Below, piece by piece: positions 16,804-30,156 of a DNA stretch of 64,000 nt. Where the stretch lies: the NCBI GenBank assembly GCA_002189035.1, contig NEEC01000007.1:2294001-2358000 (forward strand), given 5' to 3'. Source of the DNA: Utricularia gibba (taxonomy: Eukaryota; Plantae; Magnoliophyta). The notes below the pieces were generated by a model. It was not told the DNA's origin and did not search any database. It saw only the letters and a program-made list of their open reading frames with translations. The stretch's first letter is position 1. Each line of letters opens with the position of its first letter. The position numbers and the translations under genes are program-made.

Positions 16804-18884
16804 ATGTGGTTGCAGCGGAAGGGTGGGGTTGCTTCTTTGGAAGCAGTTATTGAAATCTCTAGAAAGAAATGGTTTTTCCAAACCTGCTCATGTTCAAGCA
16901 TTTCCCAAAAGAAAACAAAATTGGCACCACTGCAGGTAAACAGGGCCATATGTTTGCGCCTCCCCTATTTCATATTTTCGAATGTTTAGCCTAAGCTTTT
17001 GTAATATGCTTTATGTAGGAGCGAAAAATGATAGATAGATTCAAGCTGTGGGCTAAAGGAGGTGATGGAGGAAATGGTTGTTCAAGCTTTCGCCGTAGTC
17101 GTCATGATCGCCGTGGAAGACCTGATGGTATTCCTTTGCTACAAACTGGTCAAAGTGAACCCATCTTGATAGATAGAGAAAGGCGTGCAATAATGTCATA
17201 TGATAAGCCTAGGTCTCTTTTCTTATGTTGTTTTTCTGATGCATGCCACAAATGTTTCATTCTTTCTGGATATTGGGATCTTGGTTTCACACTCATTCCT
17301 TGGGTAGGGAAGGCAGAGTCTTGATCTAAGACATGGGATTCCTGGATTTTGCTTACGGTGTTACTTTTAAATGCAGGCGGTAATGGTGGAAAAGGAGGTG
17401 ATGTTATCTTAGAATGCTCAACAACAGTGTGGGATTTTAGTGGTCTGCAACATCATATAGTGGGTAACACATCCTTTCTGTTAACATGTGGTGACTTACT
17501 CTTTCTGTTTATTTTTGTCCTTCCCGATCATTCACAACATTAGGAGTGATTTTGTTATCTTCTGCATTGCTGGACGAGCGATTTGAAAACCTCTTCTATT
17601 TTCCAGAATGCGAAAAGAGGAGGAAATGGCGCTCCCAAAAATATGATAGGCAGCCGAGGAGCTGATAAGGTGGCATTTTAAAATGGTCTCCCCCATTGAA
17701 ATTCATTTTTTCCTGAAACAAAAATGGCCGGATTTCAATTACAGGTTGTTCAAGTACCTATTGGGACTGTTATCCATCTACTTCAAGGTGAAGCTCCTAC
17801 ATACGTCGAGAAGAAACCTTCTGGATCCCTGGATCCTTGGGAGATTCCTGATAAACTCGACTCTGGGTTTTCTGAGTTCTGTGAACCATCTCTCACAGAG
17901 GGAACGCGGAAGTTGGCTATTAAGAAGGCAAGAGGAGCCGAAAAATTCACATTATCTGCTCGGAAACTTGATCAACATGAGGCAGCAATTTTTCTCGAAG
18001 ATGAAATCCTTAATGAACCCGAAGCACATTCTTGGACAGGAGGAAATAGAAAATATTCAACTTCAGGCAACGAGACTAGCACGTCTGAACCAGAGCACGA
18101 GGAAGATTTATTGGACATACAGGAAGTCGTTGAACTTACTGCACCTGGTGAACAAGTAATTGTTGCTCGAGGAGGGTGTGGAGGTTTGGGCAATATGCAC
18201 ACTGCAAAGGGTCTCAGTATCTCGAGCCCTAGCAACGATAATGCAACTGGTGAGCCTGCTCTAGACAATCTCGGCCAACCGGGGTCAGAAACACTTGTTC
18301 TATTGGAACTGAAAACTATTGCTGATGTGGGCCTTGTTGGCTTGCCAAATGCTGGGAAAAGCACCCTTCTTGGTGCTCTATCAAGGGCCAAACCGAGAGT
18401 TGGCCACTATGCCTTCACCACACTGAGGCCGAATCTAGGAAATTTAAACTATGATGATATCTCCATCACTGTGGCTGATGTCCCTGGTCTCATAAGAGGA
18501 GCTCATGAAAACCGGGGCCTTGGACATGCTTTTCTACGCCATATCGAGCGTACGAAAGTGTTGGCCTACGTAGTGGATCTAGGCAGAAAGGATACACCTC
18601 CATGGGAGCAACTCAGAGACCTGGTATTAGAACTCGAGATGTACAACAATGGCTTGTCCAATCGGCCCTCTTTGGTGGTCGCAAACAAGATCGATGAGGA
18701 GGGTGCTGAAGATGCGTTACAACAACTGAAAAGAAGGGTGGCTCATGTTCCCATTTTCCCAGTTTGTGCTGTTCTTGAAGAAGGAATACAAGAGCTGAAG
18801 GCTGGCCTCAAGGAGCTGGTAAGGCCCCTGGATGTGGAACAACACGCCCTCAGCCTGAAACTAGACCATATTCTCCTTGACTAG
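16804..18884 (+). CDS. OBGM: Obg-family GTPase, mitochondrial type (ObgM)
   Basis: Exons 16804-16935, 17019-17127, 17377-17459, 17607-17669 and 17745-18884. Gly-rich Obg fold (GGDGGNG), G1 GLPNAGKS, G2 YAFTT, G3 DVPG and G4 NKID. Confidence 0.93.
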
Positions 18885-19865
18885 GGGATCCTTCTCAGTT
18901 CTTTACAGTTAATTATGAATTGGTATTTTACGTAGTTTTTTATTTTAATAATAAGATAATGATTTTGTTTGAAATAAATTCTGTTTTTGAAAAAATGTTT
19001 TAATATTAATTGTATTATTAAATACAAATAAATTGTATTCCAAGATCTGTTTGAAGTTTTTTCAATCCATATATTCATTATACTTGATTTTGTAGTTTTT
19101 TGGGTGAGGAATAAATTGAATTTAATATTTTGAAAATTCATAATTCTTTGAATTAGTGTACTTGAGTTCAATTTAATTGTTTTGTTATATATTCTATTTT
19201 ATTGTTTATTTCAAATTTCATAATAATAATTAGAAAATTAAAATTATGAAAGTAATGAAATTTAAATATAAACAGAAAATCATTGTATTAGATGTATCAT
19301 AAAATTAATATATTAACTTGATTTTGAATTTTATATTATATAATAATTTAATATAAACGGCAAATCATCGGAACCGGGGAGGGGAGGAGTGGCTGGCTGG
19401 CTGGTTGCATGGGAGCTAAAGTTTTATTATTATTATTATTATTTTTCTTCTGGGATTCTTCGCATTCGCGTGGATAGTTTGATTCCCATTTGAATTTGCT
19501 GAATCAGTTTATTTCTAGCTGGATTCTTTGCAAATGGATTGATGCACTCCTCCTCCTGATTGTTCTTTTCGTTTCTTGCTTTGTGATTTTAGAAATTTGG
19601 GATTTATGTAGACCTTTTGAAATTTAACCGGATAGGTTCTTTCTCCTCCTGGATTCTTCTCAGTCTGGTGGATATATTGATTTCCCAGTCGATTCTAGTT
19701 GAATTTTCTGAGTCCGGTTTTTTGTACCGCGATTTCGGTGCAAATGGATTTATGCCCTTTTCTTTTCTTGCTTTTTGGTTCCTTAAATATGGGATGCATG
19801 CAGACCTTTCAAGGTGAGGAATTTGTTCGGTGCTGTGGATTATTAGCTGAATGGTTGCTCGGAGA

Positions 19866-21098
19866 ATGGGGTCTCAGGATGGTGGGACGAATGCTAATGA
19901 AGGGAACCAAACTGAAACACAAATGGTGCAGAATCAAATGACTGATTTATTGGGGCCTTTAAGTAGCATGGATCTTGATGAGCTTCTCATGTCTGTGTGG
20001 ACGCCTGAGATGGATAATAATCAAGTGATAGAATGTGATGGGTATCAGACTGCCACTCCCCAACCAGCTCCATCGTCTGGTTTGTCTTTGGATAACAACC
20101 CTCCTCTTCCTCAACCAGAGGAGCTAAGCCAGAAGACGGTTGATGAGGTGTGGCAGGGCATTCAGGATGGGCAGAAATGGAGTAATCATGACAGGGAGTC
20201 TGCTCAGGGAGAAACATCTTTTGACGACTTCTTGATTAAAGCTGGATTTTTTTCTGAGCCAACCCGTGAAAACATAACTTTGTGCTCTGTTACTGATCCT
20301 GTAGGGTTGCCCCAAGAAGCTCGGTGGATGAGTTATCAGGCCCTTCCAGTGCATTCTCAGCCGCAACTCCCCATTATCACACCCGGCCATCACGAGTTTG
20401 CCCTCCCCGCCTTCCCTGATACTCAAATGTTCATGTCCTCTTCCTCTTTGATAGGTACCTCCTCTGGTGCTCAGATGCCTGGAAGGAAAAGGGGTACTCC
20501 CGATAACCTAGCTAGAAGGCGTGAAAGGAGGCAGAAGAGGTTGATTAAAAACCGTGAGTCCGCAGCACGATCACGAGCTAGGAAGATGGTACTCTTTACT
20601 TCGCAATTGTACCAGCTACTATGACTTCCATTTTTAGCCGGTGATTCTGAATGCATTCTGTGTTTTCATTCTTCAATACTACCGAATGGTTGATGCTTTT
20701 TACTTCAGTTATATACACATAAGCTGGAGAGTATGGTCTCACGTCTGGAGGAGGAGAACAAAAACCTTAAGAGACAACAGGTACTTTGTGCTTGTCTTTT
20801 CTTGAATAACTGCCTCACTCCCTGCTTCCTTGCCATTTTCATAAAAAATATAGTGTCATTCTACGTTGTCGTTACCATTTATTACCATCCTAGATATTGA
20901 TCTAGTTATGGGGTGTTTGGCACCTGTGCACACAAACACTAGGCCACGCTTTTTCTGTTGGTTTCCCAATCCGCAATATATCTACACTCTTCATTGCTGT
21001 GGGTGACCTTATAGGAAATGGAGAAGGTGCTGCACAGCGTTTCACGACCGGTGCCAAGATATAGTCAGCTGCGCAGGACAAGGTCATCGCCACCGTGA
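19866..21098 (+). CDS. Group A bZIP transcription factor (ABI5-like/AREB3/EEL type), divergent
   Basis: Exons 19866-20588, 20709-20780 and 21015-21098. Motifs LSSMDLDELL, LSQKTVDEVW, FDDFLIKAG, the basic region RRQKRLIKNRESAARSRARK and C-terminal LRRTRSSP. Confidence 0.9.
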
Positions 21099-21487
21099 AA
21101 ATCTGATAGTCTTTACGACCTGGTTTGTCCATGTTGCAGCAACAGAACCTTATGATGAAGATGTCTGTGAATTTGTGCCCACTGATCTTTACATATATAT
21201 ATCAATAAACGTACCTTCATGGTCTTTTAATGGCCTGCTGTAGATAACCCCAGCAACAAACATATTGGCTTGTGGGCGTCGTGTTTGATTTTCTGATATA
21301 GAAATATGAAGTTTCCTCTGGCACATACGATTTGAACTGCAGGCTTGATGGCAGAAGCTCCTTCCTCCGTCTAGCGGTGCCAGAGCATTTGCCCTCCCAG
21401 AGGGATAGCCTGAGGAAGGAGATGGTGTTGCTGGTCTGTTCCGTTTAACTATTGTAACAAGTTGATCCCCAATACTCAGCATGATAC

Positions 21488-21495
<8 letters not shown>

Positions 21496-21540
<45 letters not shown>
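21496..21540. repeat. (AG)~22 microsatellite
   Basis: Direct reading of the sequence. Confidence 0.95.
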
Positions 21541-21544
<4 letters not shown>

Positions 21545-22843
21545 GTACATGAAGAAGCAACAAAAGTTGTAATGTAGAATGTTGTGTATGTTTCTTACAA
21601 ATGATGGAAATTGACTAAAGGGCAGCAAAACTGTTCTTTGTTGGCGCTGGTTCACTGCCCCGATTTTCACATGCCTTTCCAAACTACTGTTCCCTCCTGA
21701 AAGATTCATTTGCAGTGATATCAACCTCATGTCCGAGCCTCGAATTTGCAAAACAACGTGCTGATGATCTAGAGAAGATATACTTCGAAGTACTTGAATC
21801 CCAAGATAGAAAGCGTCAGAAGTTAGAGGAAACTGAAATAAGAAATAAGGATATAGTCTACACCACTTATTTTATAAATTCTATTTATGAATATTGGATA
21901 AGTAAAACTCAAATAATTAGTTGTGGTATTTTCAACTTATTATTTATTTATGAAGAAACAAATGTATTTCGATTTTGTACAGATTTGATTTATTGGAAGC
22001 AAATACATTTGTTAGAATAAGTTAGTGACTTATTTTGATAAGTAAGTTAATGTAACTTATTAAATAAGTTGAGTTTTAAATATAAATATAGGCAAATTTA
22101 AAATAAATAAAAGTTAAGTATAAATTTGAGTAAAAATTACAAATAAATAAAAATCATGTGGTTATGTCATAAGTAATTTTAACGTATATTTAAAGTAATA
22201 AGTTGAAAAATAAGTCGTGCAGACTATATACTAATAGTTCATCAACTTCAAGAATCTATGAATAGGTACCCACAAGTCTTGTAAACTATCATTGTACTTG
22301 TTTCTTCTACAACCAAGTTCGTTTTCATCATGGTATGGAATATTGTCATACGTTTGTAGACATATATACACTATGTGCTGTTTAGTTAATAGTCAACCTT
22401 ATATCCTTCATAAATAAAAAAAATCTAAGGTAGCTCTATATACAATAAAAAAAAACTTATAGAAAAACAGCTCGATTATTAAAATATTTATATAAATGAT
22501 TTGAAGCAAGAACAACAAGGCTATTATTCATTATTTTTGATATATATCCCCATTCCCTTGATGGTGATTTTTGAGTTGATTTCATTACTTTTTAAAGAAC
22601 TTCTTGATATTAATAAAATATTTTTTGGGTAATTATTTGATTCACATGATATTAAAAAGACAAATCAATTGATTGTAGATTTAATTGGCACACAAATTAA
22701 TCCCCAACAAAAGAAAAGGTCTTCGCGAAATTGAAAAAATAATATTTAGAATTTTCAAGAGGGAGAAGTTTACAATTCTTGCTATGTTGAAAAAAAAAAA
22801 TCAAAGAATGAATTCAGAAGCTGAAAAGATCAGTTTTGATTCC

Positions 22844-24148
22844 TCAGGAGAAGGCGGTTGGCAGGGCTGTGCAGTTGAGAGCTTGGAGGGTGGGGATGAT
22901 GAGGCTTTGCTCGATGCGGACGGCGATCTCCTGTGTGAAGTGAATTCCATCCCAGAACATGTGGCGTTCGGGATGGGAGCATGCGGGCACTCCGGCGCTG
23001 CCGCAGAATCTGTTGCTGCTGTAGTTGTACGCGCCTCCGATCCCGCAGCAGGCTCTCAGGGCGGTGGCTGCATGACCCTCTGTGCACGAATCAATGGTAA
23101 ATAAATGATGAGCATCTCTGCCGACTACAGGTGGAGAATGAATGCGAGGGCTTGCCTTGATTCAATCTGTCGAGGATTTGGAGGAAGCCCTCGTCGAAGG
23201 CGCCGTAGATGAGGGTGACGTTGGGGAACTCCCTGCCCAACTCGTTGATGGCTTGCCGGAGGTAGTTGTTCTTCATGGTGATGAGCCTGTTGACGCTGCT
23301 GAGGCATCCCAGGCGATCGTAGGCGGTGGGGTCGCCGGAGGGCATTGCGGTCAGGATGTAGGGGAAGCAACCCAGAGGGGCGCTGCCCGGGATGACGATG
23401 AGCCTTGCTCCCATCCCGATGAGTTGCTGCAAGTAGGGAGATTATATCAGTATGAAGGAATGGCCACAACTGGTATTTTTTTTGTGACAAAAAGGGGATC
23501 GATTAGTTACCCTGGTGGCCTGGATCTGTTCTCTGGTGATGGGGCCGACGTAAGACTGCGCTTCCTGAAGGGTCTTTCCCTGCGTGAGGGCGTACCCGAT
23601 GTCGTTGGCCTCGAGGTCTCCCAGCAGCACCAGCGAATTGGCGAGCCTGTCGGCGATGCAGTCGGAGGCGTTTGCGCCGCCGCAGACGGACCGGAGGTGG
23701 GTTTGGAACCATTCGAGTTGGGTGGCGAGGGAAGTGGCGTAGCGTGGGATCCGGATGCCTCTCCGCGAGAAGAAGCCGTGGTCCATCACCGGACTCCTGG
23801 CGACCGAGAAGATGACGCCGTTGCTGGAGTTGGCCCTTTCGGAGAGAGAAGGAACGATATCCGGGAAGCCGAAGTCGAAAGCCGCGAAGTCGAAGTCGAC
23901 GAGGCCGTCAGACCATCGCCCGTTGGGGTGCCGGGATACGTCCGCCCGTAGGGTGCACGTGTGGGCGGGAGTGACTCCTGAATGAGGACGGAGTTTCCGA
24001 CGTCGGTGGCGCCGTCCCCGAAGTGGTAGAGGTAGGGAAATGGGCACACGGGATTGCCACCAGTCCGTGAAGAAGCAACCGCAGCGCTACTACAAGCACT
24101 CGCAGCAACGATCGCGAAGAGGAGGAGCTGAGAGGAGAAACCCATCAT
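22844..24148 (-). CDS. GDSL/SGNH esterase-like protein (acetylajmalan esterase-like), copy A; 1-nt frameshift near 23925 as assembled
   Basis: Exons 24148-23511, 23426-23156 and 23079-22844. Mirror of copy B, but missing one base in a G run. Confidence 0.85.
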
Positions 24149-24228
24149 CACCTGAACTGAACTGATCTGATCTGATCTGCCGTTGGTTGTTGAGCTTGAA
24201 TTATGGAGATGAACTGGGGTGCGTGGAA

Positions 24229-24237
24229 TTTATAGTA
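24229..24237 (-). promoter_or_regulatory. TATA-like box (CTATAAAT on the minus strand) in the palindrome spacer, ~80 nt upstream of the copy A ATG
   Basis: The plus strand reads tttatagt at 24229-24236. The spacing fits a core promoter plus a ~50-nt 5'UTR for the minus-strand copy. Confidence 0.55.
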
Positions 24238-24261
24238 TTCCACAGAAAGGCTTTTCCTCGG

Positions 24262-25570
24262 ATGATGATGGGTTTCTCCTCTCAGCTCCTCCTCTTCGCG
24301 ATCGTTGCTGCGAGTGCTTGTAGTAGCGCTGCGGTTGCTTCTTCACGGACTGGTGGCAATCCCGTGTGCCCATTTCCCTACCTCTACCACTTCGGGGACG
24401 GCGCCACCGACGTCGGAAACTCCGTCCTCATTCAGGAGTCACTCCCGCCCACACGTGCACCCTACGGGCGGACGTATCCCGGCACCCCCAACGGGCGATG
24501 GTCTGACGGCCTCGTCGACTTCGACTTCGCGGCTTTCGACTTCGGCTTCCCGGATATCGTTCCTTCTCTCTCCGAAAGGGCCAACTCCAGCAACGGCGTC
24601 ATCTTCTCGGTCGCCAGGAGTCCGGTGATGGACCACGGCTTCTTCTCGCGGAGAGGCATCCGGATCCCACGCTACGCCACTTCCCTCGCCACCCAACTCG
24701 AATGGTTCCAAACCCACCTCCGGTCCGTCTGCGGCGGCGCAAACGCCTCCGACTGCATCGCCGACAGGCTCGCCAATTCGCTGGTGCTGCTGGGAGACCT
24801 CGAGGCCAACGACATCGGGTACGCCCTCACGCAGGGAAAGACCCTTCAGGAAGCGCAGTCTTACGTCGGCCCCATCACCAGAGAACAGATCCAGGCCACC
24901 AGGGTAACTAATCGATCCCCTTTTTGTCACAAAAAAAATACCAGTTGTGGCCATTCCTTCATACTGATATAATCTCCCTACTTGCAGCAACTCATCGGGA
25001 TGGGAGCAAGGCTCATCGTCATCCCGGGCAGCGCCCCTCTGGGTTGCTTCCCCTACATCCTGACCGCAATGCCCTCCGGCGACCCCACCGCCTACGATCG
25101 CCTGGGATGCCTCAGCAGCGTCAACAGGCTCATCACCATGAAGAACAACTACCTCCGGCAAGCCATCAACGAGTTGGGCAGGGAGTTCCCCAACGTCACC
25201 CTCATCTACGGCGCCTTCGACGAGGGCTTCCTCCAAATCCTCGACAGATTGAATCAAGGCAAGCCCTCGCATTCATTCTCCACCTGTAGTCGGCAGAGAT
25301 GCTCATCATTTATTTACCATTGATTCGTGCACAGAGGGTCATGCAGCCACCGCCCTGAGAGCCTGCTGCGGGATCGGAGGCGCGTACAACTACAGCAGCA
25401 ACAGATTCTGCGGCAGCGCCGGAGTGCCCGCATGCTCCCATCCCGAACGCCACATGTTCTGGGATGGAATTCACTTCACACAGGAGATCGCCGTCCGCAT
25501 CGAGCAAAGCCTCATCATCCCCACCCTCCAAGCTCTCAACTGCACAGCCCTGCCAACCGCCTTCTCCTGA
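24262..25570 (+). CDS. GDSL/SGNH esterase-like protein, copy B (intact ORF; signal peptide; catalytic Ser absent)
   Basis: Exons 24262-24903, 24988-25258 and 25335-25570 (second intron is GC-AG). Blocks FGDGATDVGN, PYGRTYPGTPNGRWSDG, GDLEANDI, GARLIVIPGSAPLGCFP, ACCGIGGAYN and WDGIHFTQ. Confidence 0.92.
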
Positions 25571-25863
25571 GGAATCACACCATTGTTTCCTTCTTCTCTT
25601 TAACCATTCTTTCATTAGTTCTAATGTAAAGTGACGTGCTTAATGTCATCCACTGGGAATGCATTCATTCACATGTTTGAGTTGCCCTGTTCCCATTCCA
25701 AACAAACTGTCACAAGACATGTCTAATCCAGGACTAGATCCATAACCCCAAGGAAAAAGATGCACACAAATTCCATCACGAGGGGTAGCAGCAGCAACGA
25801 TGTTCGTACGAAAACTGAAAACGATAAACCAACTGGGAGTTGGGGGCGAACCGGTCGAAATTT

Positions 25864-28141: not shown

Positions 28142-30156
28142 TCAGGCGTCACCGGAAACTCCATGGTTCTGTCTCTCTTCCTCCTCCGGCGACTTCAGGT
28201 ACCATTTCTTCAGGCGGCTCGAGGTTTTCAGCACCTGATGGAGATGATCAATCAGTTATCGATCCACAAAACGAACCAAAAAATGTCAAAGTTGGGGAGG
28301 AAGGAGATGCTTACCTCCTCATCCCAGTTGGTTCTCCACATCATGAGGCTGAGGGCAAGAGTCACCAGCACCACCCCACTCAGCATTCCTATCCAAATTC
28401 CCTTCATCCCCATTGATCGGAAAATAGGTGAGTTTTCTTCTGTTCGGGCATGTGTCTAACTAAGCAGAATGAAAGCAGTTACCTTGACTTGGAGGTGAGC
28501 AGCGTATCCAAGAATGATCCCAAGCGGCAATCCGACCACATAGAAGCACCCGAAGTTGATCACCGCAACCGTCGCTTGCAGCCCGGCTCCGACCGCCACT
28601 CCTGTCGGATCATTAGGATGGCATGGGACGCTCGTGGTTGTTGTGGAACCAGAAACCAGTATAGCGTGTTGTGGAATTACCTGAGAAAACTGGGTATATG
28701 CTGTTGAACAGCATGGAGAATCCGAGGAGAAGGGATAGATCAGCAATGCTCTCTCCGACCGCCGCATCTTCGCTGAAGAATTGGCCAATTTTTCTCCCAA
28801 AGACGAAGCACAGGATGCTGAATACCAGCCCTATGGTGATGGAGTTTGACAGGATGACTTTGATGGAGAACTTCACAGCCTCGGCGTCGCCCCGTCCGAG
28901 CTCATTCGCAACACGGACACTGTCAAGCAACTGGTGTTAAACACTCTCCAGAACATCTTCAGAAAATGAGATTACAGTTGCTTTAAGCATACCATGCAGC
29001 TCCAAGGAGACCTAAGCAGGCCATCAGCTCCCATGCATTGATGTTCAGACTGTAATGCACTTGCTCGTCATGTTCAAAGAGGAGCTGGAGATTAGATAAT
29101 GGAGATCTATGAGAATTACACAGAGCTCTCACCATACTGAGAAGGCTGATATTGCAACTTCTGCATCTTTCATGTATCCGGCCAGTAAAACGAGAATGGC
29201 AGTGTACCATAACTCCAAGCTGAATGAAAAGGGATGAATCATATCTTGTTTTTTAAGAAAAAGTGAACGTAGAGGCTTACCAGATCATGAAACCAGAAGA
29301 TATGGAGAGTCTAACGACAGGGAAAATATCGTTGAATGCAGCTGTGCTAAAGCCTTTCCATGTATCAGGGCACCACCCACCAAAAATGTACACGAATTCA
29401 GAGATCACAACAAACCAGGAGGATATGTTGAGGGCAATCATAGCTCCTTCAACTCCCCACCCAAGCATGAAGACAAAGCTCCAAGACAAAAGGAGATGGA
29501 GAGCAAACTGGATAATGGATAAGTAAGCAATGATGGAGTTTCTCTGCTGTGCTTGTAGGTACATTTGAATTGTCAAGCTAAAAACCAGAGAGTAGTCGAA
29601 AGGAATGAACCAGACTGAAATGCGGCCCGCAGCTGCTGCAATGGGATGCTGCTCACCAAGCAGACGGAATAACGAGCCCCCGAATACAAAAAATGGAATA
29701 AAGATTGTTAAAGTAACAAGATCCACTATCCATGATCTTTGCAAGAAAATACCCATCATGTGGTACTGCTTGGCCCCAAAGGCTTGCCCACAGAGGGTTT
29801 CTGTGGCACTTGACATTCCAATCTATTGAACAGGAAAAACATATAAACTAAACATTCCAACGAAGCCCATATATAAGCAAATCTATCCCAGATATGTGAG
29901 GCAAGATTACCAAGACTCCATTGATGAAACGAACAAGCAGAGTTTGAACAAGGGCATATCCAGCAAGATCCTCTGAACCAATATGGCCAAGAAGCGACTG
30001 GGTCACGATTAATGTTCCGAATGAACAGACTCTCGCAATAACACTCGGCAAAGCAATCCTCCATATTTTCTTTGTTTCTTCACAAAAACGTGCCTTCAAA
30101 TTCCCCTCTTGACCACTCCCTGAATCAAGCAGCCTCTGCTGCAAGTCGTTCGCCAT
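28142..30156 (-). CDS. DTX: MATE efflux transporter (DETOXIFICATION family)
   Basis: Motifs EETKKIWRIALP, GMSSATETLCGQAFGAKQYHMMG, LELWY, SVRVANELGRG, GVAVGAGLQ and GIWIGM..WRTNWDEE. All junctions are GT-AG and in frame. Confidence 0.93.

What the first reader, a model, noticed from the sequence alone, without database searches (positions are those of the whole stretch)
22837..25577. 2.7-kb palindrome: a whole GDSL gene duplicated head-to-head, almost exactly from ATG to stop
Seen: two 1.31-kb arms are reverse complements, including both introns. The only difference I found is a 1-nt indel in a G/C run. Identity starts within the first codons (ATG ATG GGT) and ends 7 nt after the stop, and the outer flanks are unrelated. 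Inference: either a very recent fold-back duplication or ongoing arm-to-arm gene conversion that homogenises only the gene body, as in mammalian Y palindromes. Such long palindromes can extrude cruciforms and are normally unstable. A simple fold-back read chimera would keep mirroring the left flank, but here unique sequence resumes at 25578.
Basis: partly seen in the sequence, partly recalled or inferred. Interest (0 to 1): 0.85.

Follow-up and report, generated by a model that had tools for sequence, protein, structure and literature searches.

The report
Mirror-image GDSL gene pair, real
A plant chromosome carries two head-to-head, letter-for-letter identical copies of one secreted lipase-like (GDSL) gene 112 bases apart; independent short-read data show the pair is real, but such gene pairs are a known kind and how this one stays identical is unsettled.

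Summary
Arms 22837-24150 (minus) and 24263-25577 (plus) are exact reverse complements, both introns included. There are no substitutions and one 1-nt indel (G4 at 23925-23928 against C5 at 24486-24490). The spacer is 112 nt, and no homology continues beyond either arm end.

It is not an assembly fold-back. Contigs built from public short reads bridge the left outer junction exactly (X1) and run from the spacer into the right arm (X4). Arm word depth is at least twice flank depth in three DNA runs.

Every run that covers the indel site shows the 5-letter run, so the frameshift in the left copy is probably a consensus error.

The gene belongs to a Lamiales-wide GDSL clade that has Gly in place of the catalytic Ser. 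Further near-identical paralogues lie elsewhere in the genome.

Identity that stops at the ATG and 7 nt past the stop slightly favours gene conversion limited to the coding core (0.45) over a very recent one-step inverted duplication (0.35). Artefact is about 0.1.

Cruciform instability is overstated, given the 112-nt spacer. No read-through hairpin RNA was seen.

Unchecked notes from this scan report other head-to-head gene palindromes in the same genome, including a second GDSL one 464 kb away.

This is a new member of a known kind, of moderate interest.

The parts
22837..24150 (-). Left arm: GDSL copy L on the minus strand. Exons by mirror: 24148-23511, 23426-23156, 23079-22844. As assembled it is frameshifted in exon 1.
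   Evidence: Run X1 contig 22622-22937 bridges the outer junction 22836|22837 with 0 differences. Run X2 contig 23778-24194 bridges the inner junction.
24151..24262 (.). Non-palindromic 112-nt spacer. It holds the 5' leader of copy L (about 24149-24205) and the only TATA-like element.
   Evidence: Run X4 contig 24165-24346 runs from the spacer into the right arm. No run holds more than 0.44 of the sampled words of the centre.
24263..25577 (+). Right arm: GDSL copy R with an intact 382-codon reading frame.
24262..24903 (+). Copy R exon 1: signal-peptide-like start, block I HFGDGATDVGN, block II NGRWSDG, block III EANDIG.
   Evidence: Translation. Homologues at 64% identity carry PF00657. Motif alignment.
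24904..24987 (+). Intron 1, GT-AG, 84 nt. Its mirror in copy L is 23427-23510.
   Evidence: RNA contig joint 23426>23511 in run X5, depth 230.
24988..25258 (+). Copy R exon 2.
25259..25334 (+). Intron 2, GC-AG, 76 nt. Its mirror in copy L is 23080-23155.
   Evidence: RNA joint 25256>25333 with 2 ambiguous letters in run X5. The reading frame closes only with the GC donor.
25335..25570 (+). Copy R exon 3 with block V FWDGIH and the TGA stop at 25568-25570.
23925..23928 (-). G4 run, the only arm-to-arm difference (partner C5 at 24486-24490). It shifts the frame of copy L after ..YPGTP.
   Evidence: The X2 contig laid on this arm has the extra G, and contigs of X1, X4 and X5 over 24486-24490 show the 5-letter run.
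24223..24243 (.). 7-bp hairpin GTGGAAT/ATTCCAC around TTTATAG, which reads CTATAAAT on the minus strand. It lies 80 nt from the ATG of copy L and 27 nt from the ATG of copy R.
   Evidence: A promoter role is inferred, not shown.

Best explanation
This is a genuine head-to-head pair of one GDSL-family gene, from the Lamiales clade that has Gly in place of the nucleophile Ser. The gene is a member of a small family of near-identical paralogues in this genome. The two copies share nothing outside the stretch from the ATG to 7 nt past the stop. I infer that their coding core, with the two enclosed introns, is kept or was recently made identical by non-allelic gene conversion between the inverted copies and probably with dispersed paralogues. 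Meanwhile the untranslated flanks turned over. The 112-nt spacer carries the leader and the single TATA-like element. In the one RNA run laid, transcripts at about a third of the family's total depth continue into the flank next to copy R, and none lies in the flank next to copy L. Shown: the structure, its junctions in independent reads, at least 2 copies by depth, extra paralogues, splicing, and family placement. Inferred: conversion as the homogenising process, the promoter assignment, and that the 1-nt indel is a consensus error. The confidence of 0.45 is for the whole statement including conversion; that the pair itself is real I put at about 0.88.
For: Structure. Independent junction support: X1 contig 22622-22937 has 0 differences, with 215 nt of flank and 101 nt of arm. 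X4 contig 24165-24346 covers 98 nt of spacer and 84 nt of the right arm. X2 contig 23778-24194 runs from the left arm into the spacer. Depth of arm contigs against flank contigs: X1 8.4-10.1 against 4.1; X2 118-147 against 42.8; X4 8.5-10.8 against 2-3.1. For conversion: both ends of identity hug the coding sequence, at the ATG and at stop+7, which random duplication breakpoints would rarely give. A further paralogue seen as loose ends loses homology exactly after the stop codon (22844) and at 24205, about the predicted start of the leader; neither loose end occurs in the window. GC3 is 0.786, against 0.40-0.49 in three neighbouring ORFs and 0.26-0.52 in Lamiales homologues. Biased gene conversion has been proposed for this genome (PMC4972453). 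By contrast, the diverged head-to-head pair of the same subfamily in Castilleja keeps flank homology with ordinary end points.
Against: There is no decayed mirror homology at all outside the arms, which an old pair might be expected to keep. Identity is perfect to the last base, with no erosion at the edges. No single read or contig spans the whole structure. No run holds the whole centre. In the divergent accession X2 the spacer runs at 24260 into unrelated DNA, so the close apposition of the copies may be young. Contigs cannot separate allelic from paralogous differences, so concerted change between accessions could not be shown. High GC3 is confined to exons (introns 0.38 and 0.47), so it may reflect codon usage instead.
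Confidence: 0.45

Rival explanations
1. A very recent one-step inverted duplication, by template switch or fold-back repair of a break. It copied ATG-to-stop+7 of one copy into the promoter of the same gene, 112 nt upstream. No conversion is needed, because the arms have not yet had time to diverge.
For: There are 0 substitutions in 1314 nt, with sharp edges and no homology outside them. At an Arabidopsis-like rate of 7e-9 per site per generation (an assumption from knowledge), that allows up to about 1.6e5 generations. The spacer-to-right-arm junction was seen only in X4, which is otherwise near-identical to the window. In the divergent X2 the spacer continues into other DNA at 24260. Castilleja shows that inverted duplications of this gene type do happen.
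Against: Both break points would have to fall within 0-7 nt of the coding ends by chance. No target-site duplication and no microhomology of 2 nt or more were seen at the junctions by reading the sequence. A variant of the right-arm-to-right-flank junction is present in the divergent X2. A dispersed paralogue also ends its homology at the stop codon.
Confidence: 0.35
2. An assembly or polishing artefact: two separate GDSL loci wrongly joined in the spacer, or truly 99%-alike arms made identical by consensus polishing.
For: No run holds the whole centre. The window differs from every run by deletion-type differences: G4 against G5 at 23925-28 and at 24216-19, and (CTC)3 against (CTC)4 at 24286-94 in both arms. 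This shows consensus weakness in exactly this region. Several near-identical paralogues exist that could confuse polishing.
Against: The X1 contig joins the left flank to a minus-strand copy. The X4 contig holds part of the minus-strand leader (24165-24205) and the plus-strand gene start within one 186-nt short-read contig, so the head-to-head centre is seen directly. Arm depth is at least 2x the flanks. Unique flanks lie on both sides. The only shared short segment a misjoin could use is about 41 nt, which is trivial for long reads to resolve.
Confidence: 0.1
3. The palindrome acts as a hairpin-RNA (endogenous inverted-repeat siRNA) locus. Read-through from a neighbouring gene would give a 1.3-kb perfect double-stranded RNA that silences the GDSL family. 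This is compatible with either origin.
For: Polymerase-II-transcribed long inverted repeats are a recognised siRNA source in plants (PMC10827316). The right neighbour, a MATE gene, is on the minus strand and points into the palindrome. An earlier scan note raised this idea (s1-285363).
Against: The copies are head to head, so their own transcripts run outwards. In RNA run X5 there is zero depth over 22131-22838, only about 5 over the spacer bin, and about 230 over the gene body, so the family is highly expressed and not silenced. If the genome is Utricularia gibba, its DCL3 is truncated and 24-nt siRNAs are scarce (PMC8333044).
Confidence: 0.07

Closest known systems
Sex-chromosome palindromes kept alike by arm-to-arm gene conversion (human Y P1-P8, PMC8600007; willow W palindromes, PMC7023750)
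   Same: Inverted arms of near-100% identity around a unique spacer, carrying genes. Intrachromosomal conversion is the accepted homogeniser.
   Different: Those arms are 10 kb to Mb long, hold several genes and lie in non-recombining regions. Here there is one 1.3-kb gene per arm and a 112-nt spacer, with no evidence of a sex-linked or non-recombining setting. Conversion was not demonstrated here.
Head-to-head GDSL pair of Castilleja foliolosa (CASFOL_012599/012600, locus L001)
   Same: Same serine-less GDSL subfamily, same divergent orientation and same three-exon layout.
   Different: The arms are 82-93% alike. Homology runs about 130 nt upstream of the ATG and about 150 nt past the stop. 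The spacer is about 1.4 kb. No flanking synteny with the window was found, so it is probably an independent, older, unconverted duplication.
Endogenous inverted-repeat siRNA loci and young MIRNA genes born from inverted gene duplication (PMC10827316; Allen et al. 2004, as cited there)
   Same: An inverted duplication of a protein-coding gene that could fold into long double-stranded RNA if transcribed through.
   Different: Those loci are transcribed as one hairpin and are usually non-coding. Here at least one copy is an intact, expressed gene, the orientation is divergent, and no read-through was seen.
Concerted evolution of close inverted gene duplicates, such as the Drosophila Hsp70Aa/Ab pair (from my own knowledge, not checked here)
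   Same: Head-to-head gene copies whose coding regions stay nearly identical while the flanks differ.
   Different: No population or cross-species data here show the concerted changes.

Membership tests
GDSL/SGNH esterase-lipase family (Pfam PF00657) | Sequence homology to family members | tested here: met
   Exon 1 finds 25-51 Lamiales proteins, the best at E 3e-74 and 64% identity. Most carry PF00657 and are named GDSL esterase/lipase or acetylajmalan esterase.
GDSL/SGNH esterase-lipase family (Pfam PF00657) | Direct Pfam hit of the window's own protein | tested here: inconclusive
   Exon pieces gave no hit at E<=0.01. Two of the three pieces were submitted before the splice sites were known and were off frame. 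The spliced protein has no reference, so it was not submitted.
GDSL/SGNH esterase-lipase family (Pfam PF00657) | Block I nucleophile Ser in the GDS(L) motif | tested here: not met
   The window reads HFGDGATDVGN. All 34 aligned full-length homologues also lack Ser at this position (30 Gly, 3 Ala, 1 Asp). This is a clade-wide trait, not decay of this particular copy.
GDSL/SGNH esterase-lipase family (Pfam PF00657) | Block II Gly, block III GxND and block V DxxH | tested here: met
   NGRWSDG, EANDIG and FWDGIH align with the homologues.
Conversion-maintained palindrome (Y/W type) | Inverted arms more than 99.9% identical around a unique spacer | tested here: met
Conversion-maintained palindrome (Y/W type) | Arms more alike within a genome than orthologous arms are between lineages that already had the palindrome | tested here: inconclusive
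   Contigs of X1, X2 and X4 differ from the window at about 1% inside the arms. These differences cannot be told apart from paralogue differences, and the whole structure was not seen in any single run.
Conversion-maintained palindrome (Y/W type) | Large multi-gene arms in a non-recombining region | tested here: not met
   The arms are 1.3 kb with one gene each. The recombination setting cannot be tested here.
Endogenous inverted-repeat siRNA (hairpin RNA) locus | One transcript reading through both arms | tested here: not met
   In run X5 depth is 0 in the left flank and about 5 over the spacer bin, against about 230 on the gene body. This is one run of unstranded contigs, so the test is weak.
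Endogenous inverted-repeat siRNA (hairpin RNA) locus | 21-24-nt small RNAs from both strands of the arms | not tested
   Also, no small-RNA run was laid.
Fold-back read or assembly artefact | Mirror continues into the flank, no independent junction reads, and arm depth about half the flank depth | tested here: not met
   Unique flanks lie on both sides. Junction contigs are present in X1, X4 and X2, and arm depth is at least 2x the flanks.

The most novel reading that the evidence does not exclude
This locus is one of a genome-wide class in a very compact plant genome: autosomal head-to-head gene palindromes whose identity is limited sharply to the coding core by frequent conversion. Because the arms are identical, recombination between them could also flip the 112-nt spacer. 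The single TATA-and-leader unit would then serve either copy, acting as a slow invertible promoter. Short reads cannot see such a flip, since both orientations contain the same words.
Probability: 0.12. Interest if true: 0.7.

Novelty: new member of a known kind. Interest (0 to 1): 0.36.

Why it matters
For this locus alone the value is modest. It is a clean, verified example of a gene-sized perfect inverted duplicate on a plant chromosome, with ends that coincide with the coding sequence. That makes it a convenient place to measure non-allelic gene conversion, or very recent inverted duplication. It also lets one test how an inverted pair sharing a 112-nt promoter region is expressed.

The wider value depends on whether the many similar palindromes noted elsewhere in this genome are real. 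If they are, the genome would be a natural system for studying the birth, homogenisation and tolerance of inverted gene repeats. It is compact, has a deletion bias and, according to PMC8333044, weak RNA-directed DNA methylation.

The result also warns annotators that the frameshift in the left copy is probably not real.

Tried and rejected
- Pfam on exon pieces gave no hit. Two of the pieces were off frame, because the true splice sites came later from RNA contigs.
- A longer stop-free query meant to reach this species' own proteins found none in the collection.
- Two exact-pattern scans of metagenome contigs, one for the left junction and one for an arm-internal 33-mer, found nothing.
- The second run search, on the centre, showed that no run holds all of it.
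- No flank synteny was found with Castilleja, Rehmannia or Paulownia. Head-to-head order is not conserved: Paulownia has a tail-to-tail pair, and Rehmannia, Striga and Buddleja showed single genes within 10 kb.
- A search for decayed homology outside the arms was negative.
- No target-site duplication or junction microhomology was found by reading the sequence, so transposition was set aside.
- Part of the spacer resembles, from memory, a PacBio hairpin adapter. I rejected this because the same letters stand in short-read contigs of X4 and X2.
- I first read the differences between runs as concerted evolution between accessions. I withdrew that reading once it became clear that paralogues elsewhere supply many of those contigs.
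Full report
**What is there**

The window holds two exact reverse-complement arms, 22837-24150 and 24263-25577.
- There are no substitutions.
- There is one gap: a G4 run at 23925-23928 against a C5 run at 24486-24490.
- The spacer, 24151-24262, is 112 nt. It is not itself palindromic apart from a 7-bp hairpin, 24223-24229 with 24237-24243, around a TATA-like TTTATAG.
- Sequence beyond the outer arm ends is unrelated: local alignment scores no better than shuffles, z<1.
- No other repeat of 150 nt or more and no third GDSL copy lie in the 64 kb.

**The gene**

Splice joints in RNA contigs (run X5) give exons 24262-24903, 24988-25258 and 25335-25570. Intron 1 is GT-AG and 84 nt. Intron 2 is GC-AG and 76 nt. 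The spliced frame is 382 codons.

Exon 1 finds only Lamiales proteins, from Rehmannia, Striga, Castilleja, Paulownia and others. The best match is E 3e-74 at 64% identity. Most of these proteins carry PF00657 and are named GDSL esterase/lipase or acetylajmalan esterase.

Block I reads HFGDGATDVGN, with Gly where the nucleophile Ser should be. All 34 aligned full-length homologues also lack Ser there, while blocks II, III and V are kept. The missing serine is therefore an old trait of the clade. This agrees with earlier notes s1-285403 and s1-210014.

As assembled, the left copy is frameshifted after ..YPGTP by the G4 run. The right copy is intact.

**Is it real?**

- X1 (2013 DNA): a 316-nt contig covers 22622-22937 with 0 differences. 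That is 215 nt of the unique left flank joined to 101 nt of the left arm. Its depth is 3.3, against 4.1 for the flanks.
- X4 (2016): a 186-nt contig covers 24165-24346. It runs from the part of the spacer that is the minus-strand copy's leader into the plus-strand gene start. It has 0 substitutions and two small insertions. This shows the head-to-head centre within one short-read contig.
- X2 (a divergent accession): a 416-nt contig covers 23778-24194, from the left arm into the spacer.
- The right outer junction appears as a variant in X2 (loose end at 25596, matched) and in an RNA contig of X5.

Both arms collapse onto the same words, so two copies predict twice the flank depth.

| Run | Arm contig depth | Flank contig depth |
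|---|---|---|
| X1 | 8.4-10.1 | 4.1 |
| X2 | 118-147 | 42.8 |
| X4 | 8.5-10.8 | 2-3.1 |

The excess above 2x fits extra paralogues.

Limits: the output listed only some pieces. No piece spans the whole structure. No run holds more than 0.44 of the sampled words of the centre.

**The indel and other small differences**

Every contig that covers the indel site shows the 5-letter run. The X2 contig laid on the left arm has the extra G, and X1, X4 and X5 contigs over 24486-24490 show no gap. The window also lacks one G at 24216-24219 relative to X2 and X4. It lacks one CTC at 24286-24294 in both arms relative to all four runs. Single-letter losses in G/C runs are typical long-read consensus errors (my own knowledge). 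I rate the left-copy frameshift as probably not real, at about 0.7.

**Further paralogues**

Loose ends point to copies elsewhere, and none of these sequences occurs in the window.
- One copy diverges immediately after the stop codon (22844, in X2).
- One copy shares the leader up to 24205 and then has a different, TATA-containing upstream sequence (X2 and X4).
- In X2 the spacer runs at 24260 into unrelated DNA instead of into the right arm.
- X1 holds a copy with a different intron 1 (loose end at 24911).

Because of these copies, the roughly 1% differences between runs and the window cannot be assigned to alleles or to paralogues. I do not use them as evidence of concerted evolution.

**Expression**

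In X5 the gene body stands at about 230. A contig of depth 77 runs from the right arm at least about 90 nt into the right flank; I inferred that reach from the bin depth. The left flank 22131-22838 has zero depth, and the spacer bin about 5.
- The right copy, or an allele of it, is therefore expressed.
- Most transcripts probably come from other paralogues.
- The left copy shows no 3' end of its own.
- No read-through across the palindrome is visible.

The neighbours are an Obg-like GTPase on the plus strand (17724-18884) and a MATE gene on the minus strand (29277-29816, with spliced RNA from about 25900).

**Origin**

There is no target-site duplication and no useful microhomology at the four junctions (read directly). 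Two models remain.

(a) Gene conversion limited to the coding core.
- Both ends of identity hug the coding sequence, at the ATG and at stop+7. Random breakpoints would rarely do this.
- A dispersed paralogue also loses homology at the stop codon.
- GC3 is 0.786, against 0.40-0.49 in neighbouring ORFs and 0.26-0.52 in homologues. Biased gene conversion has been proposed for this genome (PMC4972453).
- The Castilleja head-to-head pair of the same subfamily is 87% identical in protein and 82-93% in DNA. Its homology reaches about 130 nt upstream and about 150 nt downstream. That is what an unconverted inverted duplication looks like.

(b) A very recent one-step inverted duplication.
- There are zero substitutions, perfectly sharp edges and no decayed mirror homology outside them.
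- In X2 the spacer does not abut the right arm.
- With no conversion, zero differences in 1314 nt allow up to about 1.6e5 generations at 7e-9 per site per generation (the rate is an assumption).

My weights are (a) 0.45, (b) 0.35, artefact 0.1 and other 0.1.

**Claims I would soften**

A 112-nt unique spacer makes cruciform extrusion unlikely, so the instability argument is weak. This rests on established knowledge and was not tested here. The hairpin-siRNA idea (s1-285363) has no support in the one RNA run and remains untested with small RNAs. If the genome is Utricularia gibba, its DCL3 is truncated and its methylation is low (PMC8333044).

The name U. gibba is given in note s1-190968. It is consistent with the Lamiales-only homologues, the absence of this species' own proteins from the collection, and contig sets of about 95 Mb. 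I did not verify it.

**Context in this scan**

Unchecked earlier notes report similar structures in the same genome:
- a second head-to-head GDSL palindrome 464 kb upstream (s1-233709);
- an RNR1 palindrome (s1-197778);
- a sharply bounded coding-core palindrome (s1-281461);
- an identical tract inside diverged inverted invertase paralogues (s1-231603).

They raise the prior that conversion between inverted copies is common in this genome, but they are not independent evidence.

**Comparison and verdict**

In mechanism, the closest known systems are the conversion-maintained palindromes of sex chromosomes (PMC8600007, PMC7023750) and concerted evolution of close inverted gene pairs. In form, the closest are plant inverted-repeat siRNA loci (PMC10827316). 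This locus meets the structural features of a palindrome. It does not meet the size or setting of the sex-chromosome class, and the decisive conversion test was inconclusive.

It is a new member of a known kind. The interest is moderate, and it lies mainly in the sharp coding-core boundaries and in the possible genome-wide pattern.

Noticed in passing
L001:6738-11821 (Castilleja foliolosa JAVIJP010000016.1): A second species has a head-to-head pair of the same serine-less GDSL subfamily. The proteins are 87% identical and the arms 82-93% complementary. Homology extends past the ATG and the stop, and the spacer is about 1.4 kb. No synteny with the window was found.
   Followed up: partly
window 24391-24423 (block I) and homologues P0001-P0048: Gly (or Ala/Asp) replaces the GDSL nucleophile Ser in all 34 aligned full-length Lamiales homologues. 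YLYHFGDG.TD.GNS is strongly conserved, and the block V Asp and His are kept.
   Followed up: partly
window 24262-25570 against 17724-18881, 19851-20621 and 29277-29816: The GDSL coding sequence has GC3 of 0.786. Three neighbouring ORFs have 0.40-0.49 and homologues in five other Lamiales 0.26-0.52. Its introns are not GC-rich (0.38 and 0.47).
   Followed up: partly
window 21843-22235: A 393-nt AT-rich segment with 57-nt imperfect terminal inverted repeats (21845-21901 and 22179-22235), MITE-like. It is skipped in related contigs of X1 and X2 (DNA) and X5 (RNA). Those contigs have unlike flanks, so they probably come from a paralogous locus.
   Followed up: partly
window 25259-25334: Intron 2 of the GDSL gene uses a GC-AG splice pair (AAG|GCAAGC), confirmed by an RNA contig joint.
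   Followed up: yes
window 24216-24219, 24286-24294 and 24119-24127: The window is one G shorter, and one CTC/GAG unit shorter in both arms, than every public run that covers these places. This is either consensus error or a private variant carried by both arms.
   Followed up: partly
window 24205, 24260 and 22844 (loose ends of X2 and X4 contigs): Near-identical GDSL copies elsewhere in the genome share the leader up to 24205, or end their homology exactly at the stop codon. In X2 the spacer continues at 24260 into unrelated DNA (AAGGGCATGGACATGG...).
   Followed up: partly
window 21483-21545: A (GA)n microsatellite of about 60 nt lies in the left flank.
   Followed up: no
window 17724-18884 and 29277-29816: The flanking genes are an Obg-like GTPase (MMR_HSR1, GTP1_OBG) on the plus strand and a MATE transporter on the minus strand. 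The MATE gene's spliced RNA converges on the right GDSL copy.
   Followed up: partly
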